Shown: positions 5,044 to 47,088 of the stretch, one piece after another
Layout of the letters: each line of letters opens with the position of its first letter
Position numbering within the stretch: the first letter of the stretch is position 1
NCBI RefSeq assembly: GCF_947568905.1
Contig: NC_079171.1
Span: 25,172,001 to 25,236,000, forward strand
DNA length: 64,000 nt
Origin: Ostrea edulis
Taxonomy: Eukaryota
Direction: 5' to 3'
Translations under genes and position numbers: made by a program
The notes under the pieces: generated by a model
Seen by the model: only the letters and a program-made list of their open reading frames with translations
Told to the model about the DNA's origin: nothing
Databases searched by the model: none

Positions 5044-5231
5044 CGGTATATAATATATATATATTATTGGAGAGGCACGGAGGGCAACTCCGCAGTTAAA
5101 TAATCGAACGTGTTCTAGGCTGGGGGAAAACCCACTTTTGAAGAATCGAACGAGTTCGAGCTTTAGTAACAGCAGCTGTGGAGGGCCGCCCTCCGTGCCT
5201 CTCCAATAATATATATATATATATTACACCG
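5044..5231. repeat. Palindromic pair of origin-like repeat units (P1)
   Basis: About 40-bp inverted arms CGGT(AT)nTATTGGAGAGGCACGGAGGGC enclosing two TCGAAC palindromes and a GGGG-AAAA-CCC hairpin. Confidence 0.85.
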
Positions 5232-5904
5232 TTAGTTTATGGCCTCCACAGTAAATCGACCGGTTGTAGTTTTGGGGACGATTTTGATGTTAAACCTCAT
5301 GTTATTGAGGACCTGTGCATGGTTTTGTGCGTGTTGTGTGTAGTTGTCTAATACAATTTACAAGTATAGAACACAAGTATATGGTTGGCGTTTGATAAAT
5401 TTACAAGTATAGAACACAAGTATATGGTTGGCGATTGATGAAGTTTTTTTTACAAGTCCACGGTTGATGATATAAAAAAATTGCAAGTGTATAACACAAG
5501 TCCACGGTCAGTGTATGATTTGATGATTTGATGGTTTGATAAAGTTACAAGTATATATATAACACAACTACATGGTTAGCGGTTAGATTGAAGTCGCAAG
5601 AAAAACACCAGTCTAGCGTTCATGTTCTAAGTGCGTGTTTTAAATGGGTCAGGTATAACCCGACTAGATGGGTGGTTCAACTGAGTGCACTTTTGAGGTC
5701 AAAGGTCAAATTTTAGATAGCTCGTACTAGGACTGTGTCTGTCGTGCTATTTCGTAAACAAAATGGTAACAACCACAAAGTCGTGCACAAAAGAGATAGG
5801 GGATATTCTCTCCCGGATTTTTCTAAGTATGTGTTGGTGTTTTTGAAATAATATCGCAAGAAAACGTAAGTCCAGAGTTGGTAAGTAAAGTTTCGATAAA
5901 TAAC

Positions 5905-6585
5905 CAAGTTTAACCACCAAAAACTACACACAAAAACAGACAACTAGTGCCTTTCTAATGGATTTTTTCTAAGTATACGATGTACTGTGGAGGGCACATA
6001 GTGACGGTATATAATATATATATATTATTGGAGAGGCACGGAGGGCGGACCTCCACAGCTAAAAGATTGAACACGTTCGAGGCTGGGGATTCCCCGTTTC
6101 TTCGTTTGATAATGCTAAAGATATAGAACACAAGTCCAGGGTTGGTGTTTGATAAAGTTAAAAATATAGAACGCAAGTCCAGGGTTGGCGTTTGATAACG
6201 TTACAAGTTCGTGCTTGACGTTTGATAAAGTTTTAAAAATATAGAACACAAGTCCAAGGTTGGTGTTTTAAATTGAGACCACAGGAAACACAAGTTCGGG
6301 GTTGGGGTTCTAAGTGATATTATAAACAAACACGAGTTCACTTTTATATATGCTAAGTGCGTGCTTTAACGTTTACAACTATATATCCCAGTAAATTTTA
6401 AATAAAGACGAGTTTAACCACTAAAACTACACACAAAAACAGACAACTAGTGCCTTTCTAATGGATTTTTTCTAAGTATACGATGTACTGTGGAGGGCAC
6501 ATAGTGACGGTATATAATATATATATATTATTGGAGAGGCACGGAGGGTAACTCCGCAGTTAAAAAATCGAACGAGTCCGAGCTC
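5905..6585 (+). repeat. About 150-bp direct repeat carrying single origin-like units (6005-6080, 6508-6585) plus about 40-bp tandem repeats
   Basis: AACCACYAAAACTACACACAAAAACAGACAACTAGTGCC...GGCACGGAGGG occurs at about 5905 and about 6410. ATATAGAACRCAAGTCC units at 6120-6260. Confidence 0.8.
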
Positions 6586-6830
6586 GGGATGATCTTCGTA
6601 GCTCTATGTTTCCTTTTTATACAAACACTCGCTTACTGGAGTGAAACTTAGACCTTTTCTCAAAACCCAGTGTGTAATCCTATACACACACACCTCAACA
6701 ATAAGGAGTCATGTTTTTTTTAAGTTTCAAACATTTTATATAAAGCAATATCAAACAACATGAAATAAAATTTACAAGAACATATATACACACATCATAT
6801 AGCATTACAGAAATCAAATGTGACAAAAGT

Positions 6831-7270
6831 TTATCGTCGGGGTCCCAATACACGCCTCAATCTTAACCGCCGTACGGGGATTTCTGGTAAATTGTCATTA
6901 GCATTATCGGCTTCGGTATTTTCGACAACAGCAGGCACATTATCATTGTCAGTTTTGCTAACAGCATCATTGTCAGTTTTGCTAACCACATCAGTATCAG
7001 TTACAGTTTCGCTAACGACATCAGTTTCGGTTACAGTCTCGGCTGTCTCCTCGACATCCGGATTCATCGTCTCGGCCGTCCTAGTATATCGTATCGGACG
7101 ACCACGCCGACGACCGCCTGCTCCAACACGTCTCTTTCTGCGGGCAGGCGGGTTTGATTCTCCACCGATATACGTGAATGTACCATCGGGTTCCTCCCTC
7201 ACGATCACATTGTCTGAGTCGTTATCACTGCTGAGATCTCTGTAGGCGTTGGGGTCGCGCAGCTCGGCGT
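6831..7270 (-). pseudogene. 3' remnant of a paralogue of the 873-aa gene, cut at the inverted-repeat boundary
   Basis: LRDPNAYRDLSSD.DSDNV...RRGRPIRYTR...RRVLGPR matches the C-terminus of 35393-38014. Upstream sequence is the IR. Confidence 0.75.
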
Positions 7271-7293
7271 ACACATGAACATTGCACACACAA

Positions 7294-8286
7294 TTAAAAT
7301 AGTTCCTTGAAGGTTAGCGCCAACCGTCTGGCCTTCATTGATTTGGTAGCACTAACCTTCGATTTCGAAATGTTAGAGTGTGTGTACTTCGTCAGGGCTG
7401 AGTTTTGATGCTGTGGCGAGAACATCTCCGGCGAGCCACACACTCTCGTTGCCTGAATCACACGTTTAAGTTTATTGTCGTTGACCACGACTTTGGGTCC
7501 CGGTGTTCTTGCAGACTTCTTACCGCCCGTCGATTTCTCCGCCGTCGTCTTTAGTATCGCGTTATCCCTGCTGAGATTGTGTTTATTAATAAATTTCCCC
7601 AAGGTGTTGATGGCGGCGGATACCTCCGACAAATCCTTAAATTGCGCCCTGGACGCATCTATACAATTATCCAAGTCGGCCAGAATGGCCTTGATGCTAC
7701 CCAATCTACTGGATAGATCGTTTTCGATCTGTGTTGTACGGTCGTTCACTAACTCTTGCAGATGATTGACTTTAGTGTAATATACACTCTTGACGAAAAT
7801 GCTGCATTTGTCACCATATAAAAAATTGTTAAAAATGCACCACCTATTTCTAATGTGGTGATCAATGATGGGCAATGTCTCGTCCAGATATTTATCTTTG
7901 GGATTCGGTGTATCGATCGATATCCCACAGAAGAAGCACGTGGATTTGGAACAGCTGTTATCGTGGAATAATCCGGATGTTACAAGTTCGTCTATCACAT
8001 TAGCCTTCAATCCGCATCCAACATATGTCTCGCGCCTACGATCTTCGTGGGCGAAGAATTTGTGGGCCGAAGGATGAATGTATTCATGTTTCACACTATC
8101 TTCTGTCGTAATAACTTGGCGTACATTCCCATCAAACGTTAAGCTATAATCGTTTGCACTCTTCACAGTCTTACGGTCGTGCTGTCCCAATTTCACGGCA
8201 TCTGTCGATTTACCCCAAGGGTTCACACACTTAGAGTACGGCTTGGTCCGATTGTTGCCCAAAACTTTAGATTTCATCGCTGACAT
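7294..8286 (-). CDS. 330-aa protein with a divergent BIR-like zinc domain
   Basis: RRETY...LVTSGLF...CFFC-X22-H-X6-C (canonical BIR is CX2CX16HX6C). No RING. Confidence 0.75.
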   Translation of the reverse strand: MSAMKSKVLGNNRTKPYSKCVNPWGKSTDAVKLGQHDRKTVKSANDYSLTFDGNVRQVITTEDSVKHEYIHPSAHKFFAHEDRRRETYVGCGLKANVIDELVTSGLFHDNSCSKSTCFFCGISIDTPNPKDKYLDETLPIIDHHIRNRWCIFNNFLYGDKCSIFVKSVYYTKVNHLQELVNDRTTQIENDLSSRLGSIKAILADLDNCIDASRAQFKDLSEVSAAINTLGKFINKHNLSRDNAILKTTAEKSTGGKKSARTPGPKVVVNDNKLKRVIQATRVCGSPEMFSPQHQNSALTKYTHSNISKSKVSATKSMKARRLALTFKELF

Positions 8287-8435
8287 CGTGGTAAATGATT
8301 AAAAATGATACGATAATAATCTGTCTATAGTTATATTACATAAATCGCACAATACGTTGTGATAATATTATGCGCTACGGAGGATATATATAATCATTAT
8401 AAATCGAACACGTTCATTTTCTTTTACTTTCACTT

Positions 8436-10793
8436 TCACTTTCTCACTGTTGTCTTAATTCGTTTAGCTCTATCGGCCTTCTTCCGAGCATCAATACCTC
8501 GTTGTTTTATGACATGTCGAGCCTCTGCCAAATCTTCGGATACATGTCTAGCGAGTTGTGCAGCCGTAATCATAGTATATTTAAATTCTGGATCATTGTG
8601 ATGAGCTAAATTTTCCTCGTGGATCAGCTGATACCATTTAGCTTCGTTTAGTGCCATGATAGCAATAGCCATCGAACGATGCTTTAATGTTGCCTCACGA
8701 ATTTCGGGAGTATCACCGAACAATTTATCGAGAACATGGGTCATTAGCGAAGCTTTCTTCTGGCCGAGGTTACATAATGCACATGATTGCCGATCCCTTT
8801 GAGCCTCCTCGCGAAACTTGGCGCGCATACTGTTGCGGACTTCAGTAGACTTTCCGATATATCTTGATGGATTGTCGATACCATTTTTAAAACATTTGTC
8901 ACACAGGATCCAGAACTCATTTTTATCGCTGTTCTCGAAATATCTATCTAATACGGCATGTCTAGCACTGTTCGATGTTTCACCTATATCATGATTATCT
9001 AGAATCTGCCTAACCGCTTCTTTCTCAGCCTGGTTATCTATGCGTCTATTCGAGTTAGTATGTCTTGTGTAAAACTCGCTGAATGCCCACAACTCTGGCG
9101 GTTTGAACGGTAAGATTTGAGGTATCTTTATCGGTTTCGATGTTATTATGGCACTAGGCATATATGTACCAATACTTTTCCCCACTTCTTCCGGATCTGC
9201 TGTTTCGAAAAACTTTAACTTATTTGCCCACAGATCCTCGGTTAATCCGAAATTACTGAGGGCCTGACATTGGTACATTTGCGCCACTTGTTCCACTGTA
9301 GATATCGGTATTTTTTTGAACATCGATGTACGTTTGATTTTACTCAACCTTTTGTTGACGTACGCGATGCGTTCTGTGACATAATCATCACTCTTTTCAC
9401 TTTCATCGGCCGGTTCCGCAATGTGTAGAGATCTAAAATCGTCCGATACATCGGTTGCGACATCTATATCTGACAGTATACGATCTTGCACAAGGTTGTC
9501 ATTAGACGGACTCCCCCCTTCGAACATCATACTAGAGAAATCGTGATCGTGTAGATCCACGGTACCATGGTCGACTTGGGTAGGTGAATAACCGTTTCTG
9601 CTTTTAAGATCGCTCTCGTACAACGATCTTTGGGGAATGAACTCGATGTCTCCTATATCGACATTTGTCTCCTTCTGACCATTCTTCATTTCATAGTATT
9701 TTACTACTATTCTTTCCTGATCTAATTGGGCGGTTTTATTCGCTACCGACCGACTTCGTTTTCGTCCATCCCCAACACCAATCGCGACATCATCCTCTCG
9801 ATCTTCTTTAGTTTCCGCGAAGTGTTTGTTCACACTCCGAATTTGATCGTTCATCTGCTTCCACAGGTGTATGGTAGCTCCAGTTATGGAAGTTGTAACT
9901 ATTCTGATAGCGTGTGTGCTAATGACGTCTCGTCTTTCTGCCATTTCTTCTTCATTAAACTTAATGACCTTTATCAAAGTGTCACCAGTCACTCTCTTGG
10001 CAGCCGGATTCAATGGTATGGGTACGGCTACATATCGACCACGATCGTCCGGTCTCAACAACACATGTCCGTGTTCATCTAGTTCCGATATAGCTATCAA
10101 ATCCGCCATCATGTTAGCCAGGTATGAGATCGGAGGTGGCGAGTAGACTGTTTCACCTTTACTATTCAATAGCGTGGCGCTGAGCACCATCTGAGGAGAC
10201 AAGTATCTATCTGGATTATAAATTCCAGATACTACGTGCATGAATTCGAATAGTTTGTAATAGTTAAAGTGACCATAACCAGTAGCTCCTCTCGAAGTCT
10301 TCGGATACTTATGAAGCTTCATCATGTTGGTCACTATTCTAGTATACTGGTCGCCATTAAAGGCTTTCTTGGCACTTGCTACGGTAATCTGTTTAAAGAT
10401 ATCCCGTGGTATTTCCGATATACAAAAACCTTTCCTGAGGTTTGTTTCTAGTGGAATTCCAGAGAAGTTGTAGAAGGCTCTAAGTTTATGAGCTTCATCC
10501 ATATCTGGAGGACACACTCTCCTGTATCTGGTTTGTATACCTTCAGTATTAGCGATATGGTTGGCAACTTCATCGTACCCCAAGCGTTTAGCCATAGCTA
10601 CGCAGAAATGGGCATCATAATCAACTTTCATTTGATAACATCCGCCACACACCATAGCTTCACCATGACAGGCTGGTCGGATGAATATTTCGTCCGACTC
10701 ATTGTAGAACAGTAGCTTTTTATTCTTGGCGAAATATCGTTTGGCAGACATGATTATTTTGGTCGAAAATATCCTTACAACGACTGTGTTCAT
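8436..10793 (-). CDS. 785-aa hypothetical protein with Cys/His clusters
   Basis: Long ORF; CHGEAMVCGGC..HFC, LCDKC and CALC clusters. Confidence 0.85.
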   Translation of the reverse strand: MNTVVVRIFSTKIIMSAKRYFAKNKKLLFYNESDEIFIRPACHGEAMVCGGCYQMKVDYDAHFCVAMAKRLGYDEVANHIANTEGIQTRYRRVCPPDMDEAHKLRAFYNFSGIPLETNLRKGFCISEIPRDIFKQITVASAKKAFNGDQYTRIVTNMMKLHKYPKTSRGATGYGHFNYYKLFEFMHVVSGIYNPDRYLSPQMVLSATLLNSKGETVYSPPPISYLANMMADLIAISELDEHGHVLLRPDDRGRYVAVPIPLNPAAKRVTGDTLIKVIKFNEEEMAERRDVISTHAIRIVTTSITGATIHLWKQMNDQIRSVNKHFAETKEDREDDVAIGVGDGRKRSRSVANKTAQLDQERIVVKYYEMKNGQKETNVDIGDIEFIPQRSLYESDLKSRNGYSPTQVDHGTVDLHDHDFSSMMFEGGSPSNDNLVQDRILSDIDVATDVSDDFRSLHIAEPADESEKSDDYVTERIAYVNKRLSKIKRTSMFKKIPISTVEQVAQMYQCQALSNFGLTEDLWANKLKFFETADPEEVGKSIGTYMPSAIITSKPIKIPQILPFKPPELWAFSEFYTRHTNSNRRIDNQAEKEAVRQILDNHDIGETSNSARHAVLDRYFENSDKNEFWILCDKCFKNGIDNPSRYIGKSTEVRNSMRAKFREEAQRDRQSCALCNLGQKKASLMTHVLDKLFGDTPEIREATLKHRSMAIAIMALNEAKWYQLIHEENLAHHNDPEFKYTMITAAQLARHVSEDLAEARHVIKQRGIDARKKADRAKRIKTTVRK

Positions 10794-10914
10794 ATATTGA
10801 AAGTGATACTGTATTAATAATATAAAATCGGTTTATTACAAATAACATGTGTGCGGTATATAGTACAATTGACTACATAATACATTTTTGTTACAATTTG
10901 CATCAATGGTGATA

Positions 10915-11685
10915 TCACAAAATACTAAGAGGTGACTTGGATCTGGGGCGTTTTCTTGTCTTTTTCTTTGATTCTCTACGTGTTTTCGGTCGTGGTTGTG
11001 GTGCTGGTGATGATAATGCTGAAAATGTTATTAAATCGTCTTCTTCGTCCAACTCTACATCGCTCGTCTTCGACTGTATGTCTGCATCAAAAGACGTTGT
11101 TGTGATAGTTTCCACAACAGAGTTTTCGAGTTCCATATCATCGTCACACTGGTCGTCTCGACAGAGGTGTGGCGTCGTGCTCGGATTATCAACATCCTCT
11201 AATTGAATAGGACAATTGTCAAATCTCATTTTTTTCCGTATATTATCTAACGAACTCGTTGCTGAGCGTTTCTTTAATCTGGCGTCTCGTCGTCTAATGA
11301 TAGTCATAAACACATCGTGATCTTTCTCGGCATCGTACACTACGCTATGTAACTCGGGTACATCCTTAACGACGCTAGCTATTTTCACTTGAGTTACGGG
11401 TTCGACGTCAATATCTACATCATCATCATCACCATAATCTTCTTGGTATCCTAACATACAATGTATACTCGTCAGACCACTATTGTTAATTGCAGTATAG
11501 CCTCGCTTCTGTGGCGATCGTGTTTCATTTACATTGCTATCGTAATCACTATCGTTATCAGGATCGGCATAATCGTCTACTTCACGCTCGTCGTCGGCAT
11601 CATCGAAGCATTCGGTATTATCGTTTTCATGGTCGTCACCATATACAAATTCTTCGTCTGGATCCATGATGGTTTTTTTGTACAC
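10915..11685 (-). CDS. 256-aa acidic protein with basic NLS-like C-terminus
   Basis: ORF with promoter palindrome at about 11758. Confidence 0.8.
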   Translation of the reverse strand: MYKKTIMDPDEEFVYGDDHENDNTECFDDADDEREVDDYADPDNDSDYDSNVNETRSPQKRGYTAINNSGLTSIHCMLGYQEDYGDDDDVDIDVEPVTQVKIASVVKDVPELHSVVYDAEKDHDVFMTIIRRRDARLKKRSATSSLDNIRKKMRFDNCPIQLEDVDNPSTTPHLCRDDQCDDDMELENSVVETITTTSFDADIQSKTSDVELDEEDDLITFSALSSPAPQPRPKTRRESKKKTRKRPRSKSPLSIL

Positions 11686-12015
11686 ACTGTTGATTTGGGT
11701 TGTATATATGTTTTACTAATGTTGGACAACTTATAAATACAATGTGATATATTAAAGGTCGAACACGTTGGATATAAATATCGTTTCTAATAGTAAGTTT
11801 TTAAATCATCACATCCTCTGTGTTTGTAAGTTTGTAAAAATAACTGAAATTCTGTTTTAAATTTGTCGATACATATATTTAGCAAAACATCAAGCATACA
11901 CACGAATATATATAACAGTACAATACGATCATAAAATAAACTAATGTTGAATTATACACACGTTATCATAACATAAAGTTTTTCACAAATGATTCAGTTT
12001 GGCGAAGAGTCATAT

Positions 12016-13935
12016 TCAAGATTCATCGGCATCTTTGGACACTTTTGTAGATTTGGTGGAAATGGTTTCGGTAGTCTTGCGTTTACAACCACAAGTTGAC
12101 ACCCGTGGTCCTATAGGTCGGCGAACCAATGATTCACGATCGACATACCGCATATGCATATCATCGATGTGTAGGGGTTCGGAGAACTGATGGGTACGAG
12201 TTTCGGAAGTCTGAGACTCTGTATCATCTCGCTTGTTTTTCGCACCACTAAACCACCCGTTGGGGTCGTGATACGAATCGCGTTTATCATCTGAATCGTC
12301 CGAATCGGAATCTGAATCGGGGTATTCAGAATCCGAATGTTCTCGTTCTGAATCACGATCGCAGTTTTGATCGGCACGTCGATCATTTTGGTCGCCTGGT
12401 TGATATTCCATCTCCTCCTCACACTTGTTCATGCAATACATGTGACATGGTACTCTAAGTTCAACAATTTCGTGACCTTGATAGTACAGATCCTTAATCG
12501 GTGCTATTGGATGCAACTCAAAGTCGCGCAAGACCAACAGCATAGGTCTGTTCATTCGCTCCCGCATGCGAGCACGACCATCGTTTTTGATCATGTATCC
12601 GTTAGATAATACTGTCAGAATCCTGTCGAGCTTATGTCCGCGGCGTACCTGATTTAACGTGTCCCCAGACGACGTTTGTGCTACCACAATCACAATATCT
12701 GCGTTCCAAGCCGAGTCGAACGCGTATTCTACATTATCTATCCCAACAGATACTGTTAATAATTTATGAAATTCCGACCATTTCTTAACACTGTCGGTGA
12801 TGAAATGGTAATATTGGGTAGGCGTCGATATTATCAAGGGTTGTCCTTCGCCTGATAATGACAACGCGTTAAGGATCGTGTTGCTCACATGAGAACAGTT
12901 CTCTTGCTTGGAACCCGGCGATCTGATGGCTCGTATTCTGTTGGTATTCAGGTGATCATCTGAACCGGCTGTCATTACGTGTACTATTTCGGGGTCGATC
13001 GTGTATACGTCTGGATACGTGGGTTGCGTTACGCGATGCGCATGTACGGTAGTCGACACATTCATATCCACTTCAAATCGAGCCCCGGGTCTCGCCAGAC
13101 TCCTAAAATTCAAATCTTTAGCATCGATCCATGTCATGTCGGTTGGACCTACAGAAACAACCTCCGTGGATAGCACGATAATTTTGGGTTTCCCAACCTC
13201 CTTTAACCGGATGATGTCTGTTCCATTGATATAGGCATATCCCGAGTCAAGGCACACCATGGTTTTCCTGAGCACTTCTCGTTTCGATGAATTCGTGTCA
13301 CCAGAGTCAGCTTCCATTGGTGGGACGAGCAGGACTATGATGTCGTGTCCTTTGGCTTCTAACCATTTTTTACCAGCGTGAATGAAGGGTTTCTCGAGTC
13401 CCATAACATAGACCGTTTGGTTATCCGATCTGGTACTCGGTGCGATATCCGCATCAGCAACATTCGATTGTGGCAAAATTCTTTCGTGCTTGATCAACTG
13501 TACCAGTCTATGCCACTCAGATTCTGGGGCGACAATTCCAGTCTTCATCCTCGTGGAAGCTTTGGCGACCGTGTCTATGATGGCATCGATCGCAGCTCGA
13601 TTGTTCAGCATAGCATTCGCCCCGTTTAAAATCCTGTGCGCCATGTCCAATTCGAGCATTTCGAGCCTTAGATCACGATGCATATCATTAATGTAGAGTG
13701 TATCTGGAGGTTGGCTGTTAATGTAATGCTCGTGCATGCCCATACTTCGGATGAATTCTGGAATTAGCGATCCTGATCCGCGTGCCAATTCTTTGCGAAC
13801 CCTGGTCACCTCTTCCATAACGGTAACCCATCCACTACTTCTTCTCATTTTGCCGCATTGGTTGCTACACCCAAACATAGTGATTTTGTTGTGAATGTAT
13901 CGTATTTTATGAAATGAGACAAGATTATTCAGCAA
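12016..13935 (-). CDS. 639-aa protein with two degenerate CRESS-Rep SF3-helicase-like domains (likely start 13878)
   Basis: SDNQTVYVMG..VCLD..KPKIIVLS, and DNVEYAF..DIVIVV..VLSNGYMIK..RPMLLVL..HEIVEL, follow the motif order of Rep helicase domains. No Walker A GKS. Confidence 0.75.
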   Translation of the reverse strand: MLNNLVSFHKIRYIHNKITMFGCSNQCGKMRRSSGWVTVMEEVTRVRKELARGSGSLIPEFIRSMGMHEHYINSQPPDTLYINDMHRDLRLEMLELDMAHRILNGANAMLNNRAAIDAIIDTVAKASTRMKTGIVAPESEWHRLVQLIKHERILPQSNVADADIAPSTRSDNQTVYVMGLEKPFIHAGKKWLEAKGHDIIVLLVPPMEADSGDTNSSKREVLRKTMVCLDSGYAYINGTDIIRLKEVGKPKIIVLSTEVVSVGPTDMTWIDAKDLNFRSLARPGARFEVDMNVSTTVHAHRVTQPTYPDVYTIDPEIVHVMTAGSDDHLNTNRIRAIRSPGSKQENCSHVSNTILNALSLSGEGQPLIISTPTQYYHFITDSVKKWSEFHKLLTVSVGIDNVEYAFDSAWNADIVIVVAQTSSGDTLNQVRRGHKLDRILTVLSNGYMIKNDGRARMRERMNRPMLLVLRDFELHPIAPIKDLYYQGHEIVELRVPCHMYCMNKCEEEMEYQPGDQNDRRADQNCDRDSEREHSDSEYPDSDSDSDDSDDKRDSYHDPNGWFSGAKNKRDDTESQTSETRTHQFSEPLHIDDMHMRYVDRESLVRRPIGPRVSTCGCKRKTTETISTKSTKVSKDADES

Positions 13936-14061
13936 TCAGTGAAATGATCGTTCTCCAGTAAACCTGAGCTTGTTTATATATCCCAAATTTGGTTTATTAA
14001 CATGAACGTGTTAAATGCTTTAAATCGATCGGAGTTCAGCGAAAGGAGGGCAGCCCTTTGA

Positions 14062-14135
14062 CGGTGTATATATATATATATTATTAGAGCGGCACGGAGG
14101 GCAACTCCGCAGCTAAAGAATCGAACGTGTTCGAC
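14062..14135 (+). repeat. Single origin-like repeat unit between divergent Rep-derived genes
   Basis: CGGTG(TA)nTTATTAGAGCGGCACGGAGGGCAACTCCGCAGCTAAAGAATCGAACGTGTTCGA. Confidence 0.85.
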
Positions 14136-14242
14136 AGTCCTTTGGGTATATATACCAAAAATGAAAATCAAAATCAAAAACTCCAGTCTTAGAACATCGA
14201 TTGCTATTTATGTGTATACATATCTGCTTTTATTAAGAAACC

Positions 14243-14956
14243 ATGTCAGATTTGTCACAAGCAATGCTCGACGCCGACGCCATGGCTGAGTACGAAAATA
14301 ATATGATCATCAAGGCGGCCACTGATCTGAATTCTGGACGTTTGACATCTCAGATGTACGATATGTATGGAGATTGGTATGGGAGGAATATGTCGCGCAT
14401 AATGCTTAAAGCGAGCTATCTGAGGGATCCAGCGACGTACGTCGCAAGGGAGTTGAGACTTAAACGACCCATGTTACCCGATCTGAGAAATGCAGCCGTT
14501 CAGCGAAGGGGAACTCGTTTGGCAAACAGAGAGAAGGCGGTGAAGTCTGCACATGAAAGTAAACCGGAGGTTCACGACACGACCCAATCGATGTTACAAT
14601 GGCAGATTCGTGTGGCCGATTTAGCTGCGTTTACTAACTCTGACAATAGAGTCCTGTTTGTGGTGGGCAAGACTAAAGGACAAGGAAAATCTTGGATGGC
14701 GCAGTATTTGCACAAAACACTGAATTCAAACATGTTTCGTACGTGTTGTTCTGACTATTTGGCGCTATCTGGTAACATCACCAAGTATTCCGTGTTTGAC
14801 GTGGATTGTGACGAGTGCGATTTCGTCTACAGCACCTTCTACAGACACCTGGATGATACCGACGTGAAGGCTATAGTGTTTTGTAACTTCTTCCCGACGA
14901 AAATGCCGCATAGTGATGTGTTTTACATCGATCAGTACGATAAGTACCATGTGTGA
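14243..14956 (+). CDS. 237-aa CRESS-Rep-like oligomerisation plus SF3 P-loop protein lacking the endonuclease domain
   Basis: LQWQ...DNRVLFVVGKTKGQGKSWMAQYL (Walker A at 14666-14692), VFDV (Walker B), IVFCNFFP (motif C). Resembles the nanovirus-type Rep C-terminus. Confidence 0.8.
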   Translation: MSDLSQAMLDADAMAEYENNMIIKAATDLNSGRLTSQMYDMYGDWYGRNMSRIMLKASYLRDPATYVARELRLKRPMLPDLRNAAVQRRGTRLANREKAVKSAHESKPEVHDTTQSMLQWQIRVADLAAFTNSDNRVLFVVGKTKGQGKSWMAQYLHKTLNSNMFRTCCSDYLALSGNITKYSVFDVDCDECDFVYSTFYRHLDDTDVKAIVFCNFFPTKMPHSDVFYIDQYDKYHV

Positions 14957-15133
14957 GACATTTGTTATCTGTTATATGTATTGTCAATGTTTATGAACTT
15001 ATATTTCAATGTACGCATGTGTTTCAATAAAAATTGCTTGAATTCAATACGACTGTTCTGTGGTTAAAGTTTGGGTATAAAAATGATTCCGTTTTGATGA
15101 TCATGGAGGCTAATATGGAGGGCAGCCCTTTGA

Positions 15134-15320
15134 CAGTGTATATATATATATATTATTAGAGCGGCACGGAGGGCAACTCCGCAGCTAAATGATCGAACGT
15201 GTTCGAGACCTGGGGGAAACCCACTATCAAAAAATCGAAGCTGTTCGAGGTTTTAAGAGAACAATAGCTATGGAGGATGCCCTCCGTGCCTCTCCAATAA
15301 TATATATATATTATATACCG
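15134..15320. repeat. Palindromic pair of origin-like repeat units (P5)
   Basis: Inverted arms with the same spacer orientation as P1. Confidence 0.85.
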
Positions 15321-15577
15321 GCAATGTGGCCCTCCGTAGTTAATTGGATGGTGATAAAAATGTGTACCGTCGTATCAAATAACCGCTCATGAGAGAGAAA
15401 AAACTAGCTATATCTTTGTAACAATCGCTTTTATTTATATGTGTTCATTTTTATATATACGCATACATATATAGCAACGATGTATAATTACAATCAATCG
15501 TATCACACAGTGTTCTTAAAATTTCATAGCTTAATAACAGTCTTATACTATATGTTTCTGTAACAAATCTAGTTTCA

Positions 15578-16159: not shown

Positions 16160-16244
16160 GTTTTCTTGTGAATGTACTTTTCGACAGAATAATGACTAGT
16201 CATGTTTTACGACAACATCATCTCATCCATTTAAATAAAAGAAA

Positions 16245-34183: not shown

Positions 34184-34368
34184 CGGTGTATATATATATA
34201 TATTATTAGAGCGGCACGGAGGACGGCCCTCCGCAGACAGCCTCGATAAAACCTCGAACAGCTTCGATTTTTTAGAAGTGGGTTTTCCCCGCTGCTAGAA
34301 CACGTTCGATTCTTTAGCTGCGGAGTTGCCCTCCTTGCCGCTCTAATAATATATATATATATACACCG
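34184..34368. repeat. Palindromic pair of origin-like units (P7), core inverted relative to P1
   Basis: Spacer reads GTGGGTTTTCCCC instead of GGGGAAAACCCAC. Confidence 0.85.
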
Positions 34369-35077: not shown

Positions 35078-35152
35078 AGTGTATATATATATATATTATT
35101 AGAGCGGCACGGAGGGCAACTCCGCAGCTAAAATAATCCAACGTGTTCGAGC
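35078..35152 (+). repeat. Single origin-like repeat unit
   Basis: Same consensus as 14062. Confidence 0.85.
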
Positions 35153-35392
35153 TCGGGATGATTGTCTTCGCAGCTCTATGTATTTCCCAGTTTCAACCCA
35201 CAAAATCCCCCTTCGAGAAAACCAGTGCATAATCTTTATACACTCCAACAATAAAGAGTCGTGTTTTGTTTAGTTTCAAACTTTTATATATAAAACATAT
35301 CAACGAAATACAATACAACAAGAACATATATACATACATACAATAAAAATCATCACAGGAATTCATTCGATAAGTTTTACACAAAAAAAAGT

Positions 35393-38014: not shown

Positions 38015-38734
38015 AGCTATAAGTCTTCCAATCGCAAATAATCAAATCTCTCCCAAAATACAAACTATCACCTACGATGCACAAACGCAAATCACGCACT
38101 CGGACTGCCCTCCGTCTATTATACCCACACAAACATCCAACGCGTTCGACATTTTACAAACACCAACACCCAACGCGTTCGACACTTTACAAACACCAAC
38201 ACCCAACGCGTTCCACATTTTTACAAAACACTCAACGCGTTACACACGCCGGGGCCACCGATCGCCAACACGGACACACCGGGGACCCACTACCCAACCA
38301 ATACACACCCGGGGGTACCCTCCCCGCAAACAAACACTCCTCCACACCACACTCGCCCCAGCAAACCATACTCTCAGAACATCGGAACGCACTACACTCC
38401 CCCCAGCCACACCAAACCACCCACACTCAACCCCAAAACACTACCATCCCCACACACTACCATCCCCACACTCACCCAATCCACACTCCATCCCCACACA
38501 CACCACCCCCATCCCACAACACACAACCCAAAAAACAAGGGGGGGGGGGTCTACCACAAAACAGGCCACCCCTTCAAACCACACACACAAACAACACTAC
38601 TCACTAACATCTCACCCGTATTCGTTGCATTTTTTTTTGTGCGGGAGTCGGACGGGGCGGTGGCGGAGGGGACGGTCGTGCGGGCGGCGGCGCTCCGGTC
38701 CGCGCGACAACAAAACACACACGCAACCGGGCTA

Positions 38735-38914
38735 GAGAGTTGTTGGGTATAAGTTTGGTTTATTTTTTTTTGCGCGGGGTGCGGGTTGTGTGTTGAGAGA
38801 GTTGTTGGGTATAAGTTTGGTTTATTTTTTTTTGCGCGGGGTGCGGGTTGTGTGTTGAGAGAGTTGTTGGGTATAAGTTTGGTTTATTTTTTTTTGCGCG
38901 GGGTGCGGGTTGTG
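38735..38914 (+). repeat. 62-bp tandem repeat, about 2.9 copies
   Basis: GAGAGTTGTTGGGTATAAGTTTGGTTTA(T)9GCGCGGGGTGCGGGTTGTG at 38735, 38797, 38859. Confidence 0.92.
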
Positions 38915-38976
38915 GTTTGTGGTTTGTGTTTTTTTATTGTTTTTTTTTAATGGTGGTAGGGGGTGTTGTGATTGGA

Positions 38977-39050
38977 GTGGACACTGGGGTCGGTGGACAC
39001 TGGATTCGGTGGACACTAGTTGAGTGGACACTGGATTCGGTGGACACTAG
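38977..39050 (+). repeat. Five iteron-like GTGGACACT(G/A)G direct repeats, 15-16 bp period
   Basis: Copies at 38977, 38993, 39009, 39024, 39040. Confidence 0.9.
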
Positions 39051-40164
39051 TGGGGGACGAGTATGCCGGTAGCGATAGTCGCGGGACGGATAACCGACCG
39101 ACGACTAGGGCCGAATGTACACCGACTGCGGGCACACTGGTCGCATGCACACTAGCGAACCTGTACACTCCCGCTACTTACAGTACTCTCAACAAAACTA
39201 CAGGGTTAAAAAAGGCCCTGCTCTGGATTTGGTCGTTCTTGACTGGGAATGGTGTTTAAGAGTGATGTCTTGATGGGGGACGTTTTTGAGTGGGGGGACT
39301 GTGTTTTTTAAAAAGCTGGGACTGGTTTTATGTTTGGTAGTAGTAGTAGTTAGTAACAGCAGCAGTTGTTTCTGATCGGAGAGATAGATGCGGATGTGGT
39401 TTGTAGAGAGTAGACTGAGCAGAAGTAAAATCGGTGCGTGTTATACACTCGGACGAGGGTTGGTCGAACGGGTGATTAATTGGGTGTTTTTGGTGTATTT
39501 TGGGCCGGATTGGGTCGTTCCGATGGATCGCTGTGGAGGGTAATATGGAGGGCAGAGCTTTGCCGGTGTATATATATATATATTATTAGAGCGGCACGGA
39601 GGGCAACTCCGCAGCGGTAAATATCGAACGTGTTCGACAGGGGGTGTGGTCGGTGGGGATTCCCCGTTGGCGAAACCGGGGCGAGTTGGCGGTAAGAGAT
39701 ATGTAGATATGTAGAGAGAGATATGTAGAGAGAGATATGTAGCAGCCAAATGGGGGGTGGAATAGAATAGATGTTCACGGGGAAGTTTCCGTGCACTCGG
39801 TACTCCAATTCGCATCCATTCCGACGCGATTTGCCACCCATTCACCACACTAACGGCATGGTGCGACGGGGAACGACGACGGGGAACCATGGCGGACAGC
39901 GGAGGACGACGGAGGCCAGCTCTCTGCGGTGTATAATATATATATATTATTAGAGCGGCAAGGAGGGCGGACCTCCATAGCGAACGTTAAAACAACTAAC
40001 GGCCGGACACTAAACACGAACACATTAAGCATATATATCGATACCGGTGTATAACTGCGAATGGGAAAAACTTTAATATTATATAGAAAATATAATTGAC
40101 TTAATGATAGTGTTTTTTTTACACTGTTCGCATTATCAGCTGCTTAAATTGATTCCGCATAACA

Positions 40165-43224: not shown

Positions 43225-44175
43225 ATGTTGCTTATACCATTATTATGCGTGTTGTTACAATACAGTGTTGTAATGGCAGAAACTGTAATTGACTACAGCA
43301 CAGTCTGCAATAATGATAATTTGTACCCCATGAAAGGTCATACGTCTAGAATTGTAGAGTGTGAAGTCGAGGTTGGTAGAGCAGATTTGATATATAGATT
43401 CAACATAGCAGGTGATGAATCTAGAGTTGCGGATTTTAACATACACAAATCTTGTGGCGGATTGTGTGTAAGCTGGCACGCTATAGGTATGCCTGGATAC
43501 GTAATTACCCGAGATATGATGTCTGCTACACCATCACCGTATACTAAGATCTTGGCGGAGCAAGCTAATAACGGTGGGGTATTCACCCATTCGCACATAA
43601 CGAATACCTGGATCACTGACGTTGCTTCGGTAGCTATTCCGGAAATTTTATATACCAGATCAGAATACATGTCGTCAGTGTTCAAACTCATACCTGTAGA
43701 ATACGACGTGCAGCTAAAATCATTTCAAGATTCAATCCTCGTTATCTCGTTAGTATCCAAACATTACAGACACGTTGCCAAATATGGAACGGTTACGATT
43801 GGTGAAAATAAGGATTGTTCATGGCCGGTTAGAGGGTCAGATTTAGTTTTCAACATGGATAGTGAACCGTGTAAAGAAGCGATTCATTCAGGCACCGTTG
43901 TGGTATATTACGACAACGAAAGTCCAGAGGCTAGAAGTGTGAGAAGTACCGTATTACAATTAAGTATACCACACGTATATGTATCTACACGATTGAGCTC
44001 CATATATACAAACTCTTCCTTAAAACAAATTTGTGGATCATTGCATCAGTTACCAGACGGTGGTTACGATGTAACAATTAACGATTGCGACAACAAACGC
44101 CATATGACAGATATACTCGATGTTATAGAGGTACGTGCAATTAGAACTAAAACGCCGTTGGAAAAGCTTGACTAG
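43225..44175 (+). CDS. 316-aa secreted Cys-containing protein; last ~15 aa come from the IR
   Basis: Signal peptide MLLIPLLCVLLQYSVVMA. Crosses the IR boundary at 44130. Confidence 0.8.
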   Translation: MLLIPLLCVLLQYSVVMAETVIDYSTVCNNDNLYPMKGHTSRIVECEVEVGRADLIYRFNIAGDESRVADFNIHKSCGGLCVSWHAIGMPGYVITRDMMSATPSPYTKILAEQANNGGVFTHSHITNTWITDVASVAIPEILYTRSEYMSSVFKLIPVEYDVQLKSFQDSILVISLVSKHYRHVAKYGTVTIGENKDCSWPVRGSDLVFNMDSEPCKEAIHSGTVVVYYDNESPEARSVRSTVLQLSIPHVYVSTRLSSIYTNSSLKQICGSLHQLPDGGYDVTINDCDNKRHMTDILDVIEVRAIRTKTPLEKLD

Positions 44176-44779
44176 ACTATGTCCGACTATAACTTGGATA
44201 GTTCCGACTTTGGATCCTATAGCAGTTGTCAAGAGAATGAAACGTAATGGGATGGAATATGAAGAGACCGGAAAGTTGCAAAGGCGTGGGAAGTCTAAAG
44301 ATAAGCGCTATATCATTAGGGATTTGGTAGCATACGGTCCTCATAATCTCAACGACAACGTTCGCATGAGAAAGAACGGGTTTATCGCTGCTATACAAGA
44401 AGCTAGAGACAAGCGATTGGCATCGAGTACTAAGTTGTCGTATAAAAAAAACGCACATATTGGAGCCTTTATACATAACTTGGGAGCGTTGTTAGATGGT
44501 GCTGGACCGAACTGTAACGCAAACGGCGAACACTTTACCAACTTGGTGGGCGTTAAGGCAGTAGAACCACTCTTGACTAAGTTAGATGTGTTAAATAACG
44601 ATAGGTTTATAAACATGCCCATGACCGGGTTTAAGGAAGCCATGGCGGTAGCTGGCATACTCGTGCAGGAACAGTACAAGGATATGTCTATAGACGACGT
44701 AACATTTATTCTCAAATGTATAAACGACATAGTTGCACTTCTAACAGATTACGACATGCTATGTAGTCAATCTGTGTAA
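44130..44779 (+). pseudogene. 5'-truncated copy of the HUH-like gene
   Basis: Begins at G64 of 16245-17084 and lacks motif I and most of motif II. Confidence 0.75.
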
Positions 44780-44864
44780 TTTCTTTTATTTAAATGGATG
44801 AGATGATGTTGTCGTAAAACATGACTAGTCATTATTCTGTCGAAAAGTACATTCACAAGAAAAC

Positions 44865-45446
44865 ATGGTTAAGTTTGGTGTAGTTATCGTAGCACTATGT
44901 GTGAGTGGAGCATTATCTGCTGCCGTTCGCCAACCTATAGATGGTGATTTTTTAGTGGCAGATAAAGATCATCGTGTCGAGATTGAAGAAGGTTCCGGGG
45001 GTGAATTTATCCACAAGCCTAACATCCATCACCATAAGGATTCTCATAAGGACGTTCATCATATAAGCATAGATCACGATGATTCTCGACACAAGGCTAA
45101 ACCTGCTACAGAAAATGGGAATGAAGGAAGTGGATTTGGGTCGGGAGATCATACTGTAGAAATGATAACTGAAACCGTCGACAAGGATACCATTCATCAA
45201 GCAATCGCACAGATGTATGGTTGTAGGCCAGAAGAAATACACAAGTTGCGCACGGACGACGTCATTGACATCTTATTAGAAGTCGTGTCTGCAAACATCG
45301 AACAGGATAGGTTGATTGAACAATTGGCTAAGATAGTGAAGAGAAAGCGGTCCGTACTATCGGAGGCCAAACCTCTCCGTTTGTCTAGATCTAGAATGCT
45401 TAGGGAGGAACTGTCGACTATATATAGAATGAAAGTTGGACTGTGA
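44865..45446 (+). CDS. IR copy of the 193-aa secreted protein
   Basis: Identical translation. Confidence 0.8.
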   Translation: MVKFGVVIVALCVSGALSAAVRQPIDGDFLVADKDHRVEIEEGSGGEFIHKPNIHHHKDSHKDVHHISIDHDDSRHKAKPATENGNEGSGFGSGDHTVEMITETVDKDTIHQAIAQMYGCRPEEIHKLRTDDVIDILLEVVSANIEQDRLIEQLAKIVKRKRSVLSEAKPLRLSRSRMLREELSTIYRMKVGL

Positions 45447-46067
45447 TGAAACTAGATTTGTTACAGAAACATATAGTATAAGACTGTTATTAAGCTATGA
45501 AATTTTAAGAACACTGTGTGATACGATTGATTGTAATTATACATCGTTGCTATATATGTATGCGTATATATAAAAATGAACACATATAAATAAAAGCGAT
45601 TGTTACAAAGATATAGCTAGTTTTTTCTCTCTCATGAGCGGTTATTTGATACGACGGTACACATTTTTATCACCATCCAATTAACTACGGAGGGCCACAT
45701 TGCCGGTATATAATATATATATATTATTGGAGAGGCACGGAGGGCATCCTCCATAGCTATTGTTCTCTTAAAACCTCGAACAGCTTCGATTTTTTGATAG
45801 TGGGTTTCCCCCAGGTCTCGAACACGTTCGATCATTTAGCTGCGGAGTTGCCCTCCGTGCCGCTCTAATAATATATATATATATACACTGTCAAAGGGCT
45901 GCCCTCCATATTAGCCTCCATGATCATCAAAACGGAATCATTTTTATACCCAAACTTTAACCACAGAACAGTCGTATTGAATTCAAGCAATTTTTATTGA
46001 AACACATGCGTACATTGAAATATAAGTTCATAAACATTGACAATACATATAACAGATAACAAATGTC

Positions 46068-46781
46068 TCACACATGGTACTTATCGTACTGATCGATGTA
46101 AAACACATCACTATGCGGCATTTTCGTCGGGAAGAAGTTACAAAACACTATAGCCTTCACGTCGGTATCATCCAGGTGTCTGTAGAAGGTGCTGTAGACG
46201 AAATCGCACTCGTCACAATCCACGTCAAACACGGAATACTTGGTGATGTTACCAGATAGCGCCAAATAGTCAGAACAACACGTACGAAACATGTTTGAAT
46301 TCAGTGTTTTGTGCAAATACTGCGCCATCCAAGATTTTCCTTGTCCTTTAGTCTTGCCCACCACAAACAGGACTCTATTGTCAGAGTTAGTAAACGCAGC
46401 TAAATCGGCCACACGAATCTGCCATTGTAACATCGATTGGGTCGTGTCGTGAACCTCCGGTTTACTTTCATGTGCAGACTTCACCGCCTTCTCTCTGTTT
46501 GCCAAACGAGTTCCCCTTCGCTGAACGGCTGCATTTCTCAGATCGGGTAACATGGGTCGTTTAAGTCTCAACTCCCTTGCGACGTACGTCGCTGGATCCC
46601 TCAGATAGCTCGCTTTAAGCATTATGCGCGACATATTCCTCCCATACCAATCTCCATACATATCGTACATCTGAGATGTCAAACGTCCAGAATTCAGATC
46701 AGTGGCCGCCTTGATGATCATATTATTTTCGTACTCAGCCATGGCGTCGGCGTCGAGCATTGCTTGTGACAAATCTGACAT
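46068..46781 (-). CDS. IR copy of the 237-aa Rep-like P-loop protein
   Basis: Identical translation. Confidence 0.8.
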   Translation of the reverse strand: MSDLSQAMLDADAMAEYENNMIIKAATDLNSGRLTSQMYDMYGDWYGRNMSRIMLKASYLRDPATYVARELRLKRPMLPDLRNAAVQRRGTRLANREKAVKSAHESKPEVHDTTQSMLQWQIRVADLAAFTNSDNRVLFVVGKTKGQGKSWMAQYLHKTLNSNMFRTCCSDYLALSGNITKYSVFDVDCDECDFVYSTFYRHLDDTDVKAIVFCNFFPTKMPHSDVFYIDQYDKYHV

Positions 46782-47088
46782 GGTTTCTTAATAAAAGCAG
46801 ATATGTATACACATAAATAGCAATCGATGTTCTAAGACTGGAGTTTTTGATTTTGATTTTCATTTTTGGTATATATACCCAAAGGACTGTCGAACACGTT
46901 CGATTCTTTAGCTGCGGAGTTGCCCTCCGTGCCGCTCTAATAATATATATATATATACACCGTCAAAGGGCTGCCCTCCTTTCGCTGAACTCCGATCGAT
47001 TTAAAGCATTTAACACGTTCATGTTAATAAACCAAATTTGGGATATATAAACAAGCTCAGGTTTACTGGAGAACGATCATTTCACTGA

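What the first reader, a model, noticed from the sequence alone, without database searches (positions are those of the whole stretch)
5044..46962. Sixteen copies of a structured origin-like (hr-like) repeat, eight arranged as head-to-head palindromic pairs
Unit: GGAGG-containing leader, CRGT(AT)7-9, TTATT(A/G)GAG(C/A)GGCAC, GGAGGnnnnCTCC hairpin, GCAGCTAAA, ATCGAACRYGTTCGA. Singles at 6005, 6508, 14062, 33692, 35078, 39564, 39927, 46889. Pairs at 5044-5231, 15134-15320, 34184-34368, 45704-45890. An AT unwinding tract plus palindromes in dispersed clusters resembles baculovirus/nimavirus homologous regions and herpesvirus origins. None occurs beyond 47 kb.
Basis: partly seen in the sequence, partly recalled or inferred. 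Interest (0 to 1): 0.8.

Follow-up and report, generated by a model that had tools for sequence, protein, structure and literature searches.

The report
Dispersed origin-like repeats in integrated virus
A roughly 100-base repeat with a fixed A/T tract, occurring alone or as head-to-head pairs, is scattered through the gene-free gaps of a large virus-like element integrated in an animal (probably bivalve) chromosome. It looks like the replication-origin/enhancer repeats ("hrs") of other large DNA viruses, but its function is untested.

Summary
A profile of the units finds exactly 16 copies (73-95 bits; next best 18.6), all between 5.0 and 47.0 kb and all between ORFs. The count is inflated, though. 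The window holds a 9.6-kb near-perfect inverted repeat (7271-16894 / 44130-53747), so three units are mirror copies and 13 are independent. Two repeat-rich gaps (A, 4.9-6.8 kb; B, 34.1-35.3 kb) are also colinear duplicates at about 70% identity.

Each unit has an invariant block of about 46 nt: a pure A/T run of 20-22 nt plus a GC-rich box, followed by two short palindromes. The flanks are variable. Three independent pairs form 190-250-nt imperfect palindromes (ssDNA z-scores -9 to -15) with a constant 102-107-nt asymmetric interior. That interior is inverted in B relative to A.

The units are not core promoters, because neighbouring genes have their own TATA motifs. One pair lies between the poly(A) signals of convergent genes. 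There is no RNA covariation and there are no target-site duplications.

The host element is a dense, intronless set of orphan genes with several IAP/RING genes, on a 77-Mb contig. Its virus family could not be determined.

Best reading (0.5): an hr-type cis-element, that is an origin and/or enhancer. The rule against fetching DNA of animal viruses stopped me from scanning other genomes.

The parts
5023..5117 (+). Repeat unit (short-hairpin form); left arm of pair A
   Evidence: nhmmer 82.5 bits; alignment A1
5146..5252 (-). Repeat unit (long-hairpin form); right arm of pair A
   Evidence: nhmmer 72.9 bits
5023..5252 (.). Composite pair A: imperfect palindrome with perfect 33-nt arm cores 102 nt apart
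   Evidence: ssDNA fold -60.6 kcal/mol, z -11.1; inverted repeats I2 and I5
5984..6080 (+). Single unit (long-hairpin form)
   Evidence: 84.7 bits
6487..6582 (+). Single unit (short-hairpin form); its surroundings (6390-6590) are a local duplicate of 5884-6090
   Evidence: 80.1 bits; 5884-6090 matches 6390-6590 at 89%
14044..14134 (+). Single unit I1, in inverted-repeat arm L, between divergent genes that each have their own TATA motif
   Evidence: 95.4 bits
15114..15339 (.). Composite pair I2 (units 15114-15207 + and 15235-15339 -), in inverted-repeat arm L, between the poly(A) signals of two convergent genes
   Evidence: 94.9 and 76.4 bits; fold -53.3 kcal/mol, z -8.8
33671..33748 (+). Single truncated unit; local duplicate of the left arm of pair B (98% identical)
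   Evidence: 81.3 bits; 33623-33748 matches 34115-34240
34153..34399 (.). Composite pair B (units 34163-34268 + and 34296-34390 -). The arms are 70 nt at 94% complementarity with 107 nt between them. The interior is inverted relative to pair A.
   Evidence: fold -75.9 kcal/mol, z -15.3; I1; interior identity to A is 63% forward and 85% reversed
35060..35151 (+). Single unit (short-hairpin form); counterpart of 5984/6487 in the A-B duplication
   Evidence: 86.9 bits; colinearity
39543..39637 (+). Single unit C1, in the GC-rich, repeat-rich divergent gap
   Evidence: 88.6 bits
39907..39988 (+). Single unit C2, about 180-260 nt upstream of the ATG at 40165, which has its own TATA motif at -85
   Evidence: 73.6 bits
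45685..45910 (.). Mirror copy of pair I2, in inverted-repeat arm R (not independent)
46890..46980 (-). Mirror copy of unit I1, in inverted-repeat arm R (not independent)
7271..16894 (.). Large inverted repeat, arm L (9624 nt)
   Evidence: Differs from arm R by 1 mismatch and one 6-nt indel; sharp ends
44130..53747 (.). Large inverted repeat, arm R (9618 nt)
4847..7293 (.). ORF-poor gap A. It holds four units plus arrays of a second, 43-nt repeat (5359-6310). It is colinear with gap B at about 70% identity.
33313..35392 (.). ORF-poor gap B. It holds four units plus two copies of the 43-nt repeat (34520-34600).
38608..40164 (.). Gap C at the point where gene strand switches. It is GC-rich and holds several tandem repeats, including a 62-nt unit repeated 2.9 times at 100% identity, plus units C1 and C2.

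Best explanation
The units are protein-bound cis-acting DNA elements of a large, nuclear-type dsDNA virus-like element integrated in an animal chromosome. They are its counterpart of the homologous regions (hrs) or lytic origins of other large DNA viruses.

Proposed working (inferred): a factor encoded by the element or by the host recognises three things. These are the invariant GC-rich box next to the A/T run, the GGAG(G)...(C)CTCC inverted motif, and the small TCGAAC..GTTCGA-type palindrome. The adjoining pure A/T run, always 20-22 nt, is the easily melted stretch.

At three loci two units face each other across a constant 102-107-nt interior. This gives a 190-250-nt imperfect palindrome that could extrude as a cruciform. 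Its arms allow the interior to be inverted by recombination.

Such a site would start DNA synthesis, enhance neighbouring promoters, or both.

Shown: the anatomy, the conservation pattern, the placement outside transcription units, and the inverted interior.
Inferred: protein binding, unwinding, and origin or enhancer activity.
For: - Copy number: 16 copies against 0.31 expected by chance, with a clean score gap.
- Conservation: about 46 invariant columns (A/T run, 15-nt core, GGAGG) lie between flanks with 40-70% column identity.
- A/T-run length: it is fixed at 20-22 nt in all 13 independent copies, although (TA)n tracts normally drift in length. The units supply 16 of the window's 24 pure A/T runs of 20 nt or more, where 0.66 is expected from base composition.
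- GGAGG/CCTCC: 46 of the 124 occurrences in the window lie within 120 nt of a core.
- Placement: all units lie between ORFs. Pair I2 lies between the poly(A) signals of two convergent genes. Genes next to units have their own TATAWA motif 85-102 nt upstream of the ATG.
- Palindromes: the pairs are the longest local inverted repeats in the window, with a spacer of 102, 102 and 107 nt and fold z-scores of -8.8 to -15.3.
- Inversion: the interior of pair B is inverted relative to pair A inside colinear flanks, 85% identity reversed against 63% forward.
- Age: the units sit inside larger repeat-rich gaps (A, B, C). A and B have diverged to about 70%, so the units predate that duplication.
- Context: copies in a large inverted repeat plus unique sequence, together with large palindromes, are how suspected origins are laid out in OsHV-1 and in alpha- and roseoloherpesviruses (PMC3623871, PMC9836095). 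A conserved centre with variable flanks, dispersed in intergenic regions in both orientations, is how WSSV hrs are described (PMC2855118). Baculovirus hrs act both as origins and as enhancers (PMC4535591).
Against: - No function can be read from the sequence.
- There are no tandem arrays, unlike classical hrs.
- The A/T tracts lie in the arms and not at the centre of the palindrome.
- Single units have no significant fold.
- No recognisable origin-binding, IE-1-like or replication gene lies in the window.
- The virus family is unknown: the 785-aa ORF has no relative among 1.84 billion representative proteins.
- Perfect conservation of the core could come from gene conversion rather than selection.
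- Distribution outside the window was not examined.
Confidence: 0.5

Rival explanations
1. The units are purely transcriptional elements. They could be shared upstream enhancers, TATA-type promoters of a co-regulated gene class, or small non-coding RNA genes, with the conserved box as the start of the transcript.
For: - The A/T run resembles an extended TATA box.
- Units I1, C2, the left arm of pair A and 33711 lie 130-380 nt from a gene start.
- Some units are followed by a run of four to six T.
- The element otherwise uses Pol II-type TATA and poly(A) signals.
Against: - Neighbouring genes have their own TATAWA at -85 to -102, and the unit's A/T run lies further upstream.
- Pair I2 lies between two 3' ends, beyond both poly(A) signals.
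- In the pairs the units point at each other, so transcripts would converge.
- Unit orientation has no constant relation to gene orientation.
- There is no compensatory change in any stem: covariation term +0.27 and invariant stems.
- Rfam finds nothing there.
Confidence: 0.2
2. The units are a mobile foldback or MITE-like repeat, of the host or resident in the virus lineage. The pairs would be whole elements and the singles would be half elements.
For: - The pairs look like short elements with 33-70-nt terminal inverted repeats around an interior of about 105 nt.
- Bivalve genomes are rich in such repeats (general knowledge).
- The window is integrated in a 77-Mb contig.
Against: - Seven of the ten independent loci are single units.
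- No target-site duplication is seen at the ends of the three pairs (read directly).
- None interrupts an ORF, and none lies in 1-5 kb or 47-64 kb, although those parts have the same composition.
- Copies differ as much as their surroundings. The arms of A and B are 73-76% identical inside flanks at about 68%, so they were present before the A/B duplication and evolved in place.
- The interior spacing is constant and the A/T length is fixed.
Confidence: 0.12
3. The units are recombination or genome-arrangement signals. They would be sites at which segments are inverted or duplicated, for example helping to form the large inverted repeat or isomers, and would have no role in initiating replication.
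For: - The interior of pair B is inverted relative to pair A.
- Units lie in segments that have been duplicated locally and segmentally.
- Herpesvirus-type genomes with inverted repeats do isomerise (PMC9836095).
Against: - No unit lies at either boundary of the 9.6-kb inverted repeat (7271, 16894); the boundaries fall inside ORFs.
- The inversion may be a passive consequence of any palindrome.
- Thirteen copies are more than such a role needs.
Confidence: 0.08

Closest known systems
Baculovirus homologous regions (hrs), e.g. SpltNPV-II Sphr1-7 (PMC4535591)
   Same: Both are multi-copy families dispersed in intergenic DNA of a large nuclear dsDNA virus, contain imperfect palindromes, and are A/T-rich. 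In baculoviruses the hrs are shown to act both as origins and as enhancers.
   Different: Baculovirus hrs are tandem arrays of three to eight units of about 64-72 bp, each centred on a 24-30-bp palindrome bound by IE-1. Here the units are about 95-110 nt, occur singly or as one head-to-head pair, and form large palindromes only in pairs. There is no sequence similarity, and no IE-1-like gene was found in the window.
Nimavirus (WSSV) hrs (PMC2855118)
   Same: Both are dispersed in intergenic regions in both orientations. Both have a highly conserved central domain with an imperfect palindrome, flanked by more variable domains. Both are proposed, without proof, to be origins or enhancers.
   Different: WSSV hrs hold three to eight tandem units of 250-300 bp. 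There are no tandem arrays here. The window's genes show no detectable relation to nimaviruses.
Herpesvirus origin palindromes, including the large palindrome/stem-loop of OsHV-1 between ORF49 and ORF50 that is suspected to be the origin (PMC3623871, PMC9836095)
   Same: Both are large palindromes with A/T tracts in non-coding DNA. The genome context is also alike: a roughly 10-kb inverted repeat flanking a unique segment, and Pol II-type genes including IAP and RING families.
   Different: Here the A/T tracts lie in the arms, roughly 140-150 nt apart, and the centre is of mixed sequence. There are 13 copies rather than one to three. No herpesvirus hallmark or origin-binding-protein gene is in the window, so membership of the virus family is unproven.
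Foldback/MITE-type transposable elements
   Same: Both are short elements with long terminal inverted repeats, an A/T-rich tract and no coding capacity.
   Different: There are no target-site duplications, most copies are half elements, the copies have diverged in step with their flanks, and they are confined to the gaps of the virus-like element within the window.

Membership tests
Baculovirus hr | Several copies dispersed around the genome in intergenic DNA | tested here: met
   13 independent units in 5-6 gaps, none inside an ORF
Baculovirus hr | Each hr is a tandem array of 2-8 units of about 60-70 bp | tested here: not met
   Tandem Repeats Finder reports no array of the unit. Units occur singly or as one head-to-head pair. 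The nearest same-strand copies are 364-503 nt apart.
Baculovirus hr | Each unit is centred on a 24-30-bp imperfect palindrome | tested here: inconclusive
   A unit holds only 13-15-nt and 14-nt palindromes, and single units do not fold significantly. Large palindromes exist only in the pairs.
Baculovirus hr | Bound by IE-1; acts as origin and enhancer | not testable with these tools
   No IE-1-type Pfam hit among about 50 ORFs scanned, but the element runs past both ends of the window. Function needs experiments.
Nimavirus (WSSV) hr | Conserved central domain with an imperfect palindrome, flanked by variable domains, in both orientations in intergenic regions | tested here: met
   About 46 invariant columns between flanks at 40-70% column identity; both strands; intergenic
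Nimavirus (WSSV) hr | 3-8 tandem units of 250-300 bp per hr | tested here: not met
   No tandem arrays of the unit
Herpesvirus origin palindrome (oriS/oriL type; OsHV-1 stem-loop) | Palindrome with the A/T-rich stretch at its centre, flanked by inverted binding sites | tested here: not met
   The A/T runs lie in the arms. The 116-118-nt interior is of mixed sequence and only 61-66% self-complementary.
Herpesvirus origin palindrome (oriS/oriL type; OsHV-1 stem-loop) | Located in non-coding DNA, with copies in the large inverted repeats and/or the unique region | tested here: met
   One single and one pair lie in each 9.6-kb arm, with further copies in the unique 27 kb and left of arm L
Herpesvirus origin palindrome (oriS/oriL type; OsHV-1 stem-loop) | The genome encodes herpesvirus hallmark genes and, for this origin type, an origin-binding helicase | tested here: inconclusive
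   None in the window by Pfam. The 785-aa ORF has no relatives at all. The rest of the element was not examined.
MITE/foldback transposon | Terminal inverted repeats | tested here: met
   Pairs only: arms of 33-70 nt at 94-100% complementarity
MITE/foldback transposon | Target-site duplication flanking each copy | tested here: not met
   No matching short direct repeats at the outer ends of pairs A, I2 or B (read directly)
MITE/foldback transposon | Many copies spread through host DNA irrespective of context | not tested
   This would need a scan of the host assembly or public contigs. It was left out under the rule against fetching DNA of animal viruses. Within the window, none lies in an ORF or outside 5-47 kb.

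The most novel reading that the evidence does not exclude
The window belongs to an unclassified lineage of large DNA viruses integrated in a bivalve-like genome. Apart from the IAP/RING genes, none of its proteins that I searched has a detectable relative. On this reading the units are that lineage's own type of composite origin: a polar, heterotypic pair (one short-hairpin and one long-hairpin unit) around a constant-length interior that can be inverted, plus solitary half-sites serving as auxiliary or enhancer sites. That layout differs from both the tandem-array hrs and the A/T-centred herpesvirus origins.
Probability: 0.25. Interest if true: 0.7.

Novelty: new variant of a known kind. Interest (0 to 1): 0.5.

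Why it matters
If the reading is right, these units would be the first defined cis-elements of an otherwise unreadable element. That element is 64 kb or more of orphan genes integrated in an animal chromosome.

The units give a compact sequence signature of about 46 invariant nucleotides. With it, relatives of the element could be recognised and delimited in genome assemblies where protein searches fail.

They would also show a third layout for origin/enhancer repeats in large DNA viruses: solitary half-sites plus polar head-to-head pairs whose interior is found in both orientations. The known layouts are tandem hr arrays and A/T-centred palindromes.

If instead the unit proves to be a host repeat, the finding is ordinary.

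Tried and rejected
DEAD ENDS
- Protein identification of the element mostly failed. Pfam scans covered about 50 ORFs and found only BIR/RING domains and coiled-coil noise.
- The 785-aa ORF had no hit in the word search and none among 1.84 billion representative proteins.
- Sequence searches of four ORFs against solved structures gave nothing.
- Single-sequence AlphaFold models of the 620-aa ORF and of the central part of the 873-aa ORF were useless (pLDDT 33 and 35.5). No fold search was run on them.
- Rfam found only a tRNA.
- There are no telomere-type repeats.
- No paper prints the core motif.
- Literature searches for malacoherpesvirus origins gave only indirect statements.

REJECTED READINGS
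- Structured RNA gene: no covariation.
- Core promoter: neighbouring genes have their own TATA motifs, and pair I2 lies between two 3' ends.
- Assembly artefact for the large inverted repeat: the arms are 27 kb apart, have sharp ends inside ORFs, and differ by a mismatch and an indel.
- Helitron-type end: considered from the hairpin plus CTAA, but the following base and the hairpin size do not fit. This rests on my own knowledge and was not tested.

NOT DONE, because of the rule against fetching DNA of animal viruses: pattern scans of public contig collections, and look-ups of the contigs that encode the window's proteins or the related IAPs P0004-P0006.

Full report

Yes. The 15-nt core pattern quoted in the finding matches 16 times with at most one mismatch. 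One extra 2-mismatch hit at 27287 is not a unit. Dinucleotide-preserving shuffles give 0.31 matches.

I aligned the 13 independent units (alignment A1) and scanned the window with an nhmmer profile of that alignment. The scan finds exactly 16 strong matches (73-95 bits). The next best is 18.6 bits, and those weak hits are reverse-strand echoes of the same sites. Nothing lies before 5.0 kb or after 47.0 kb. The window contains no N.

The window holds a very large inverted repeat: 7271-16894 against 53747-44130. The arms are 9624 and 9618 nt and differ by one mismatch and one 6-nt indel. The ends are sharp, and 27.2 kb of unique sequence lies between the arms.

The single unit at 46.9 kb and the pair at 45.7-45.9 kb are therefore the mirror image of the single at 14.1 kb and the pair at 15.1-15.3 kb. 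This also explains why nothing is found beyond 47 kb. Independent units number 13: seven singles and three pairs.

Independence is lower still.
- The ORF-poor gap A (about 4.9-6.8 kb) is colinear with gap B (about 34.1-35.3 kb) at roughly 70% identity, in four consecutive blocks.
- The flanking genes are paralogous too. ORF 2861-3889 matches 32539-33312. ORF 4409-4846 matches a remnant in B. ORF 6831-7289 matches part of the 873-aa ORF.
- Inside A, 5884-6090 is duplicated at 6390-6590 (89%). In B, 33623-33748 duplicates 34115-34240 (98%).

Separate loci are thus the A/B lineage, I1 (14.1 kb), I2 (15.2 kb), C1 (39.6 kb) and C2 (39.9 kb).

3. ANATOMY OF A UNIT

A real copy to read is window:14044-14134:+. 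Reading 5' to 3':
- a GGAGG-containing leader;
- CGGT or a close variant;
- a pure A/T run that is 20-22 nt long in every copy, holding (TA)5-7;
- the 15-nt core, then GGAGG;
- a small inverted motif in a short form (GGAG, five bases, CTCC; seven units) or a long form (GGAGG, four or five bases, CCTCC; six units);
- a short A-rich linker;
- a 14-nt palindrome of the TCGAAC..GTTCGA kind;
- often a third small, variable palindrome.

About 46 consecutive alignment columns are invariant or nearly so, running from the A/T run through GGAGG. Column identity in the flanks is 40-70%.

There are two sequence subtypes of the core. All four copies in gap A and one arm of I2 carry one subtype. The other eight units carry the other subtype.

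The units supply 16 of the window's 24 pure A/T runs of at least 20 nt, where 0.66 is expected from base composition. Of the 124 GGAGG/CCTCC pentamers in the window, 46 lie within 120 nt of a core.

4. THE PAIRS

The pairs are the longest local inverted repeats in the window. Their arms are 33-70 nt at 94-100% complementarity. The spacer is 102, 102 and 107 nt. As single-stranded DNA they fold at -60.6, -53.3 and -75.9 kcal/mol, with z-scores of -11.1, -8.8 and -15.3. Single units do not beat shuffled sequence.

The pairs are not true palindromes. The 116-118 nt between the cores are only 61-66% self-complementary, and each pair joins one short-form unit to one long-form unit. The three pairs are copies of one composite element, with 81-85% interior identity when oriented alike.

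Relative to colinear flanks, the interior of pair B is inverted with respect to pair A: 85% identity reversed against 63% forward. This is what recombination between inverted arms would produce. The arms are too alike to tell whether the arms were inverted together with the interior.

5. PLACEMENT

Every unit lies between ORFs. Genes of the element carry eukaryote-type signals, with TATAWA mostly 60-120 nt upstream of the ATG and frequent AATAAA/ATTAAA after the stop.

The genes beside units have their own TATA motif: at -102 for 12016-13878, -96 for 14243-14956, -101 for 4409-4846 and -85 for 40165-41244. The unit's A/T run lies further out.

Pair I2 lies between the poly(A) signals of two convergent genes, so it is outside both transcription units. 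Unit orientation has no constant relation to gene orientation. The units are therefore not core promoters.

RNAalifold finds no compensatory change, with invariant stems and a covariation term of +0.27. Rfam finds nothing at the units.

Gaps A, B and C are repeat-rich non-coding regions. They also hold a second repeat family with a 43-nt period (5359-6310 and 34520-34600). Gap C holds several tandem repeats as well.

6. WHAT CARRIES THE UNITS

The window is densely packed with intronless ORFs, nearly all without any family match.
- Recognisable genes are five BIR-domain (IAP) genes, of which three also have a RING finger and four form a tandem array at 55.0-62.8 kb, a further ORF in each inverted-repeat arm with a weak sub-threshold BIR match (7294-8286 and 52732-53724), and one RING protein (25697-26308).
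- CpG observed/expected is 1.05-1.34 from 4 kb onward.
- Tetranucleotide composition is uniform to both ends of the window, apart from a GC-rich island at 36-40 kb and a lesser dip at 12-14 kb. The element is therefore larger than the window.
- The window's own IAPs are recorded on a contig of 77,126,126 bp, so the element is integrated in a chromosome-scale sequence.
- The nearest cellular IAPs are from bivalves (Ylistrum, Mytilus, Mizuhopecten; 23-29% identity) and amphioxus.
- Relatives of the tandem IAPs at 49-62% identity sit together on one 9.6-kb contig from a sequencing-run assembly. That points to a related element elsewhere.
- The 785-aa ORF in the inverted repeat has no relative among 1.84 billion representative proteins.

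The inverted repeat-unique-inverted repeat layout and the IAP/RING content recall Malacoherpesviridae (PMC3623871, PMC9836095). No hallmark gene is in the window, so the virus family is undetermined.

7. INTERPRETATION

The best-supported reading (0.5) is an hr-type cis-element. Sequence-specific boxes sit next to a fixed-length, easily melted A/T run. The elements occur as solitary half-sites or as a polar pair that can form a cruciform, and would serve as origin and/or enhancer. The anatomy, conservation pattern and placement are shown. Binding, unwinding and activity are inferred.

Rivals:
- purely transcriptional element or small-RNA gene, 0.2;
- foldback/MITE-type mobile repeat, 0.12;
- recombination or genome-arrangement signal, 0.08.

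Against the MITE reading:
- most copies are half elements;
- there are no target-site duplications;
- none interrupts an ORF;
- the A and B copies have diverged in step with their flanks, so they predate a duplication internal to the element.

8. COMPARISON WITH KNOWN SYSTEMS

The element works like baculovirus and nimavirus hrs and like herpesvirus origin palindromes. It fails a defining feature of each: it lacks tandem arrays, and it lacks an A/T-rich centre. I therefore do not file it as a member of any of them. I rate it a new variant of a known kind.

9. LIMITS AND DECLARATIONS

- I also did not look up the contigs of the window's proteins or of the related IAPs. It is listed under referred steps.
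- For the in-window scan I built an HMM profile and a sub-alignment of the 13 repeat units in the scratch folder.
- Slip: while reasoning about herpesvirus origins I recalled from memory a short recognition motif of an origin-binding protein.
- One tandem IAP paralogue (59482-61071) is cut short. It lacks its RING part, and a RING-like remnant lies downstream of its stop in sequence that contains in-frame stops.

Noticed in passing
7271-16894 and 44130-53747: A 9.6-kb inverted repeat (1 mismatch and one 6-nt indel) flanks 27.2 kb of unique sequence. Both boundaries fall inside ORFs. The layout resembles the repeat-flanked short segment of herpesvirus genomes, but sequence of the same composition continues on both sides.
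   Followed up: partly
54770-54844 (-): A tRNA-Ile gene with anticodon AAT (the eukaryotic type; Rfam 68 bits). It sits between an orphan ORF and the IAP array, 1 kb beyond the right arm of the inverted repeat. Whether it belongs to the element or to the host was not resolved.
   Followed up: no
55019-62827 (-): A tandem array of four IAP paralogues (36-68% identical). Two have BIR x2 plus a RING finger, and two lack a recognisable RING. One of those two is cut short, with a detached RING-like remnant downstream. A fifth, distant IAP lies at 21563-23350 (+).
   Followed up: partly
36000-40000: A GC-rich island (51-53% GC against about 40% elsewhere). Its tetranucleotide profile is unlike the rest of the window (r 0.15-0.26). 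It covers an 873-aa ORF with acidic and basic regions and no known relatives, plus the repeat-rich gap C, which includes a 62-nt unit repeated 2.9 times at 100% identity (38734-38914).
   Followed up: partly
5359-6310 and 34520-34600: A second repeat family with a 43-nt period lies next to the units in gaps A and B: about ten copies in A and two in B. It may be a set of factor-binding sites.
   Followed up: partly
2861-7289 versus 32539-35500: An old segmental duplication at about 70% nucleotide identity. It includes a gene, a gene remnant, the repeat-rich gap and part of the 873-aa ORF. The left copy abuts the boundary of the inverted repeat.
   Followed up: partly
proteins P0004-P0006: Three IAP relatives (49-62% identity) lie together on one 9,626-bp contig from an assembly of a public sequencing run. 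This is evidence that a related element exists elsewhere. The contig was not fetched.
   Followed up: no
1-2860 and 27330-29070: Two stretches without ORFs of 80 aa or more. The first has a lower CpG ratio (0.86) and a slightly different composition. The second is the most A/T-rich part of the window. Neither holds a unit.
   Followed up: no
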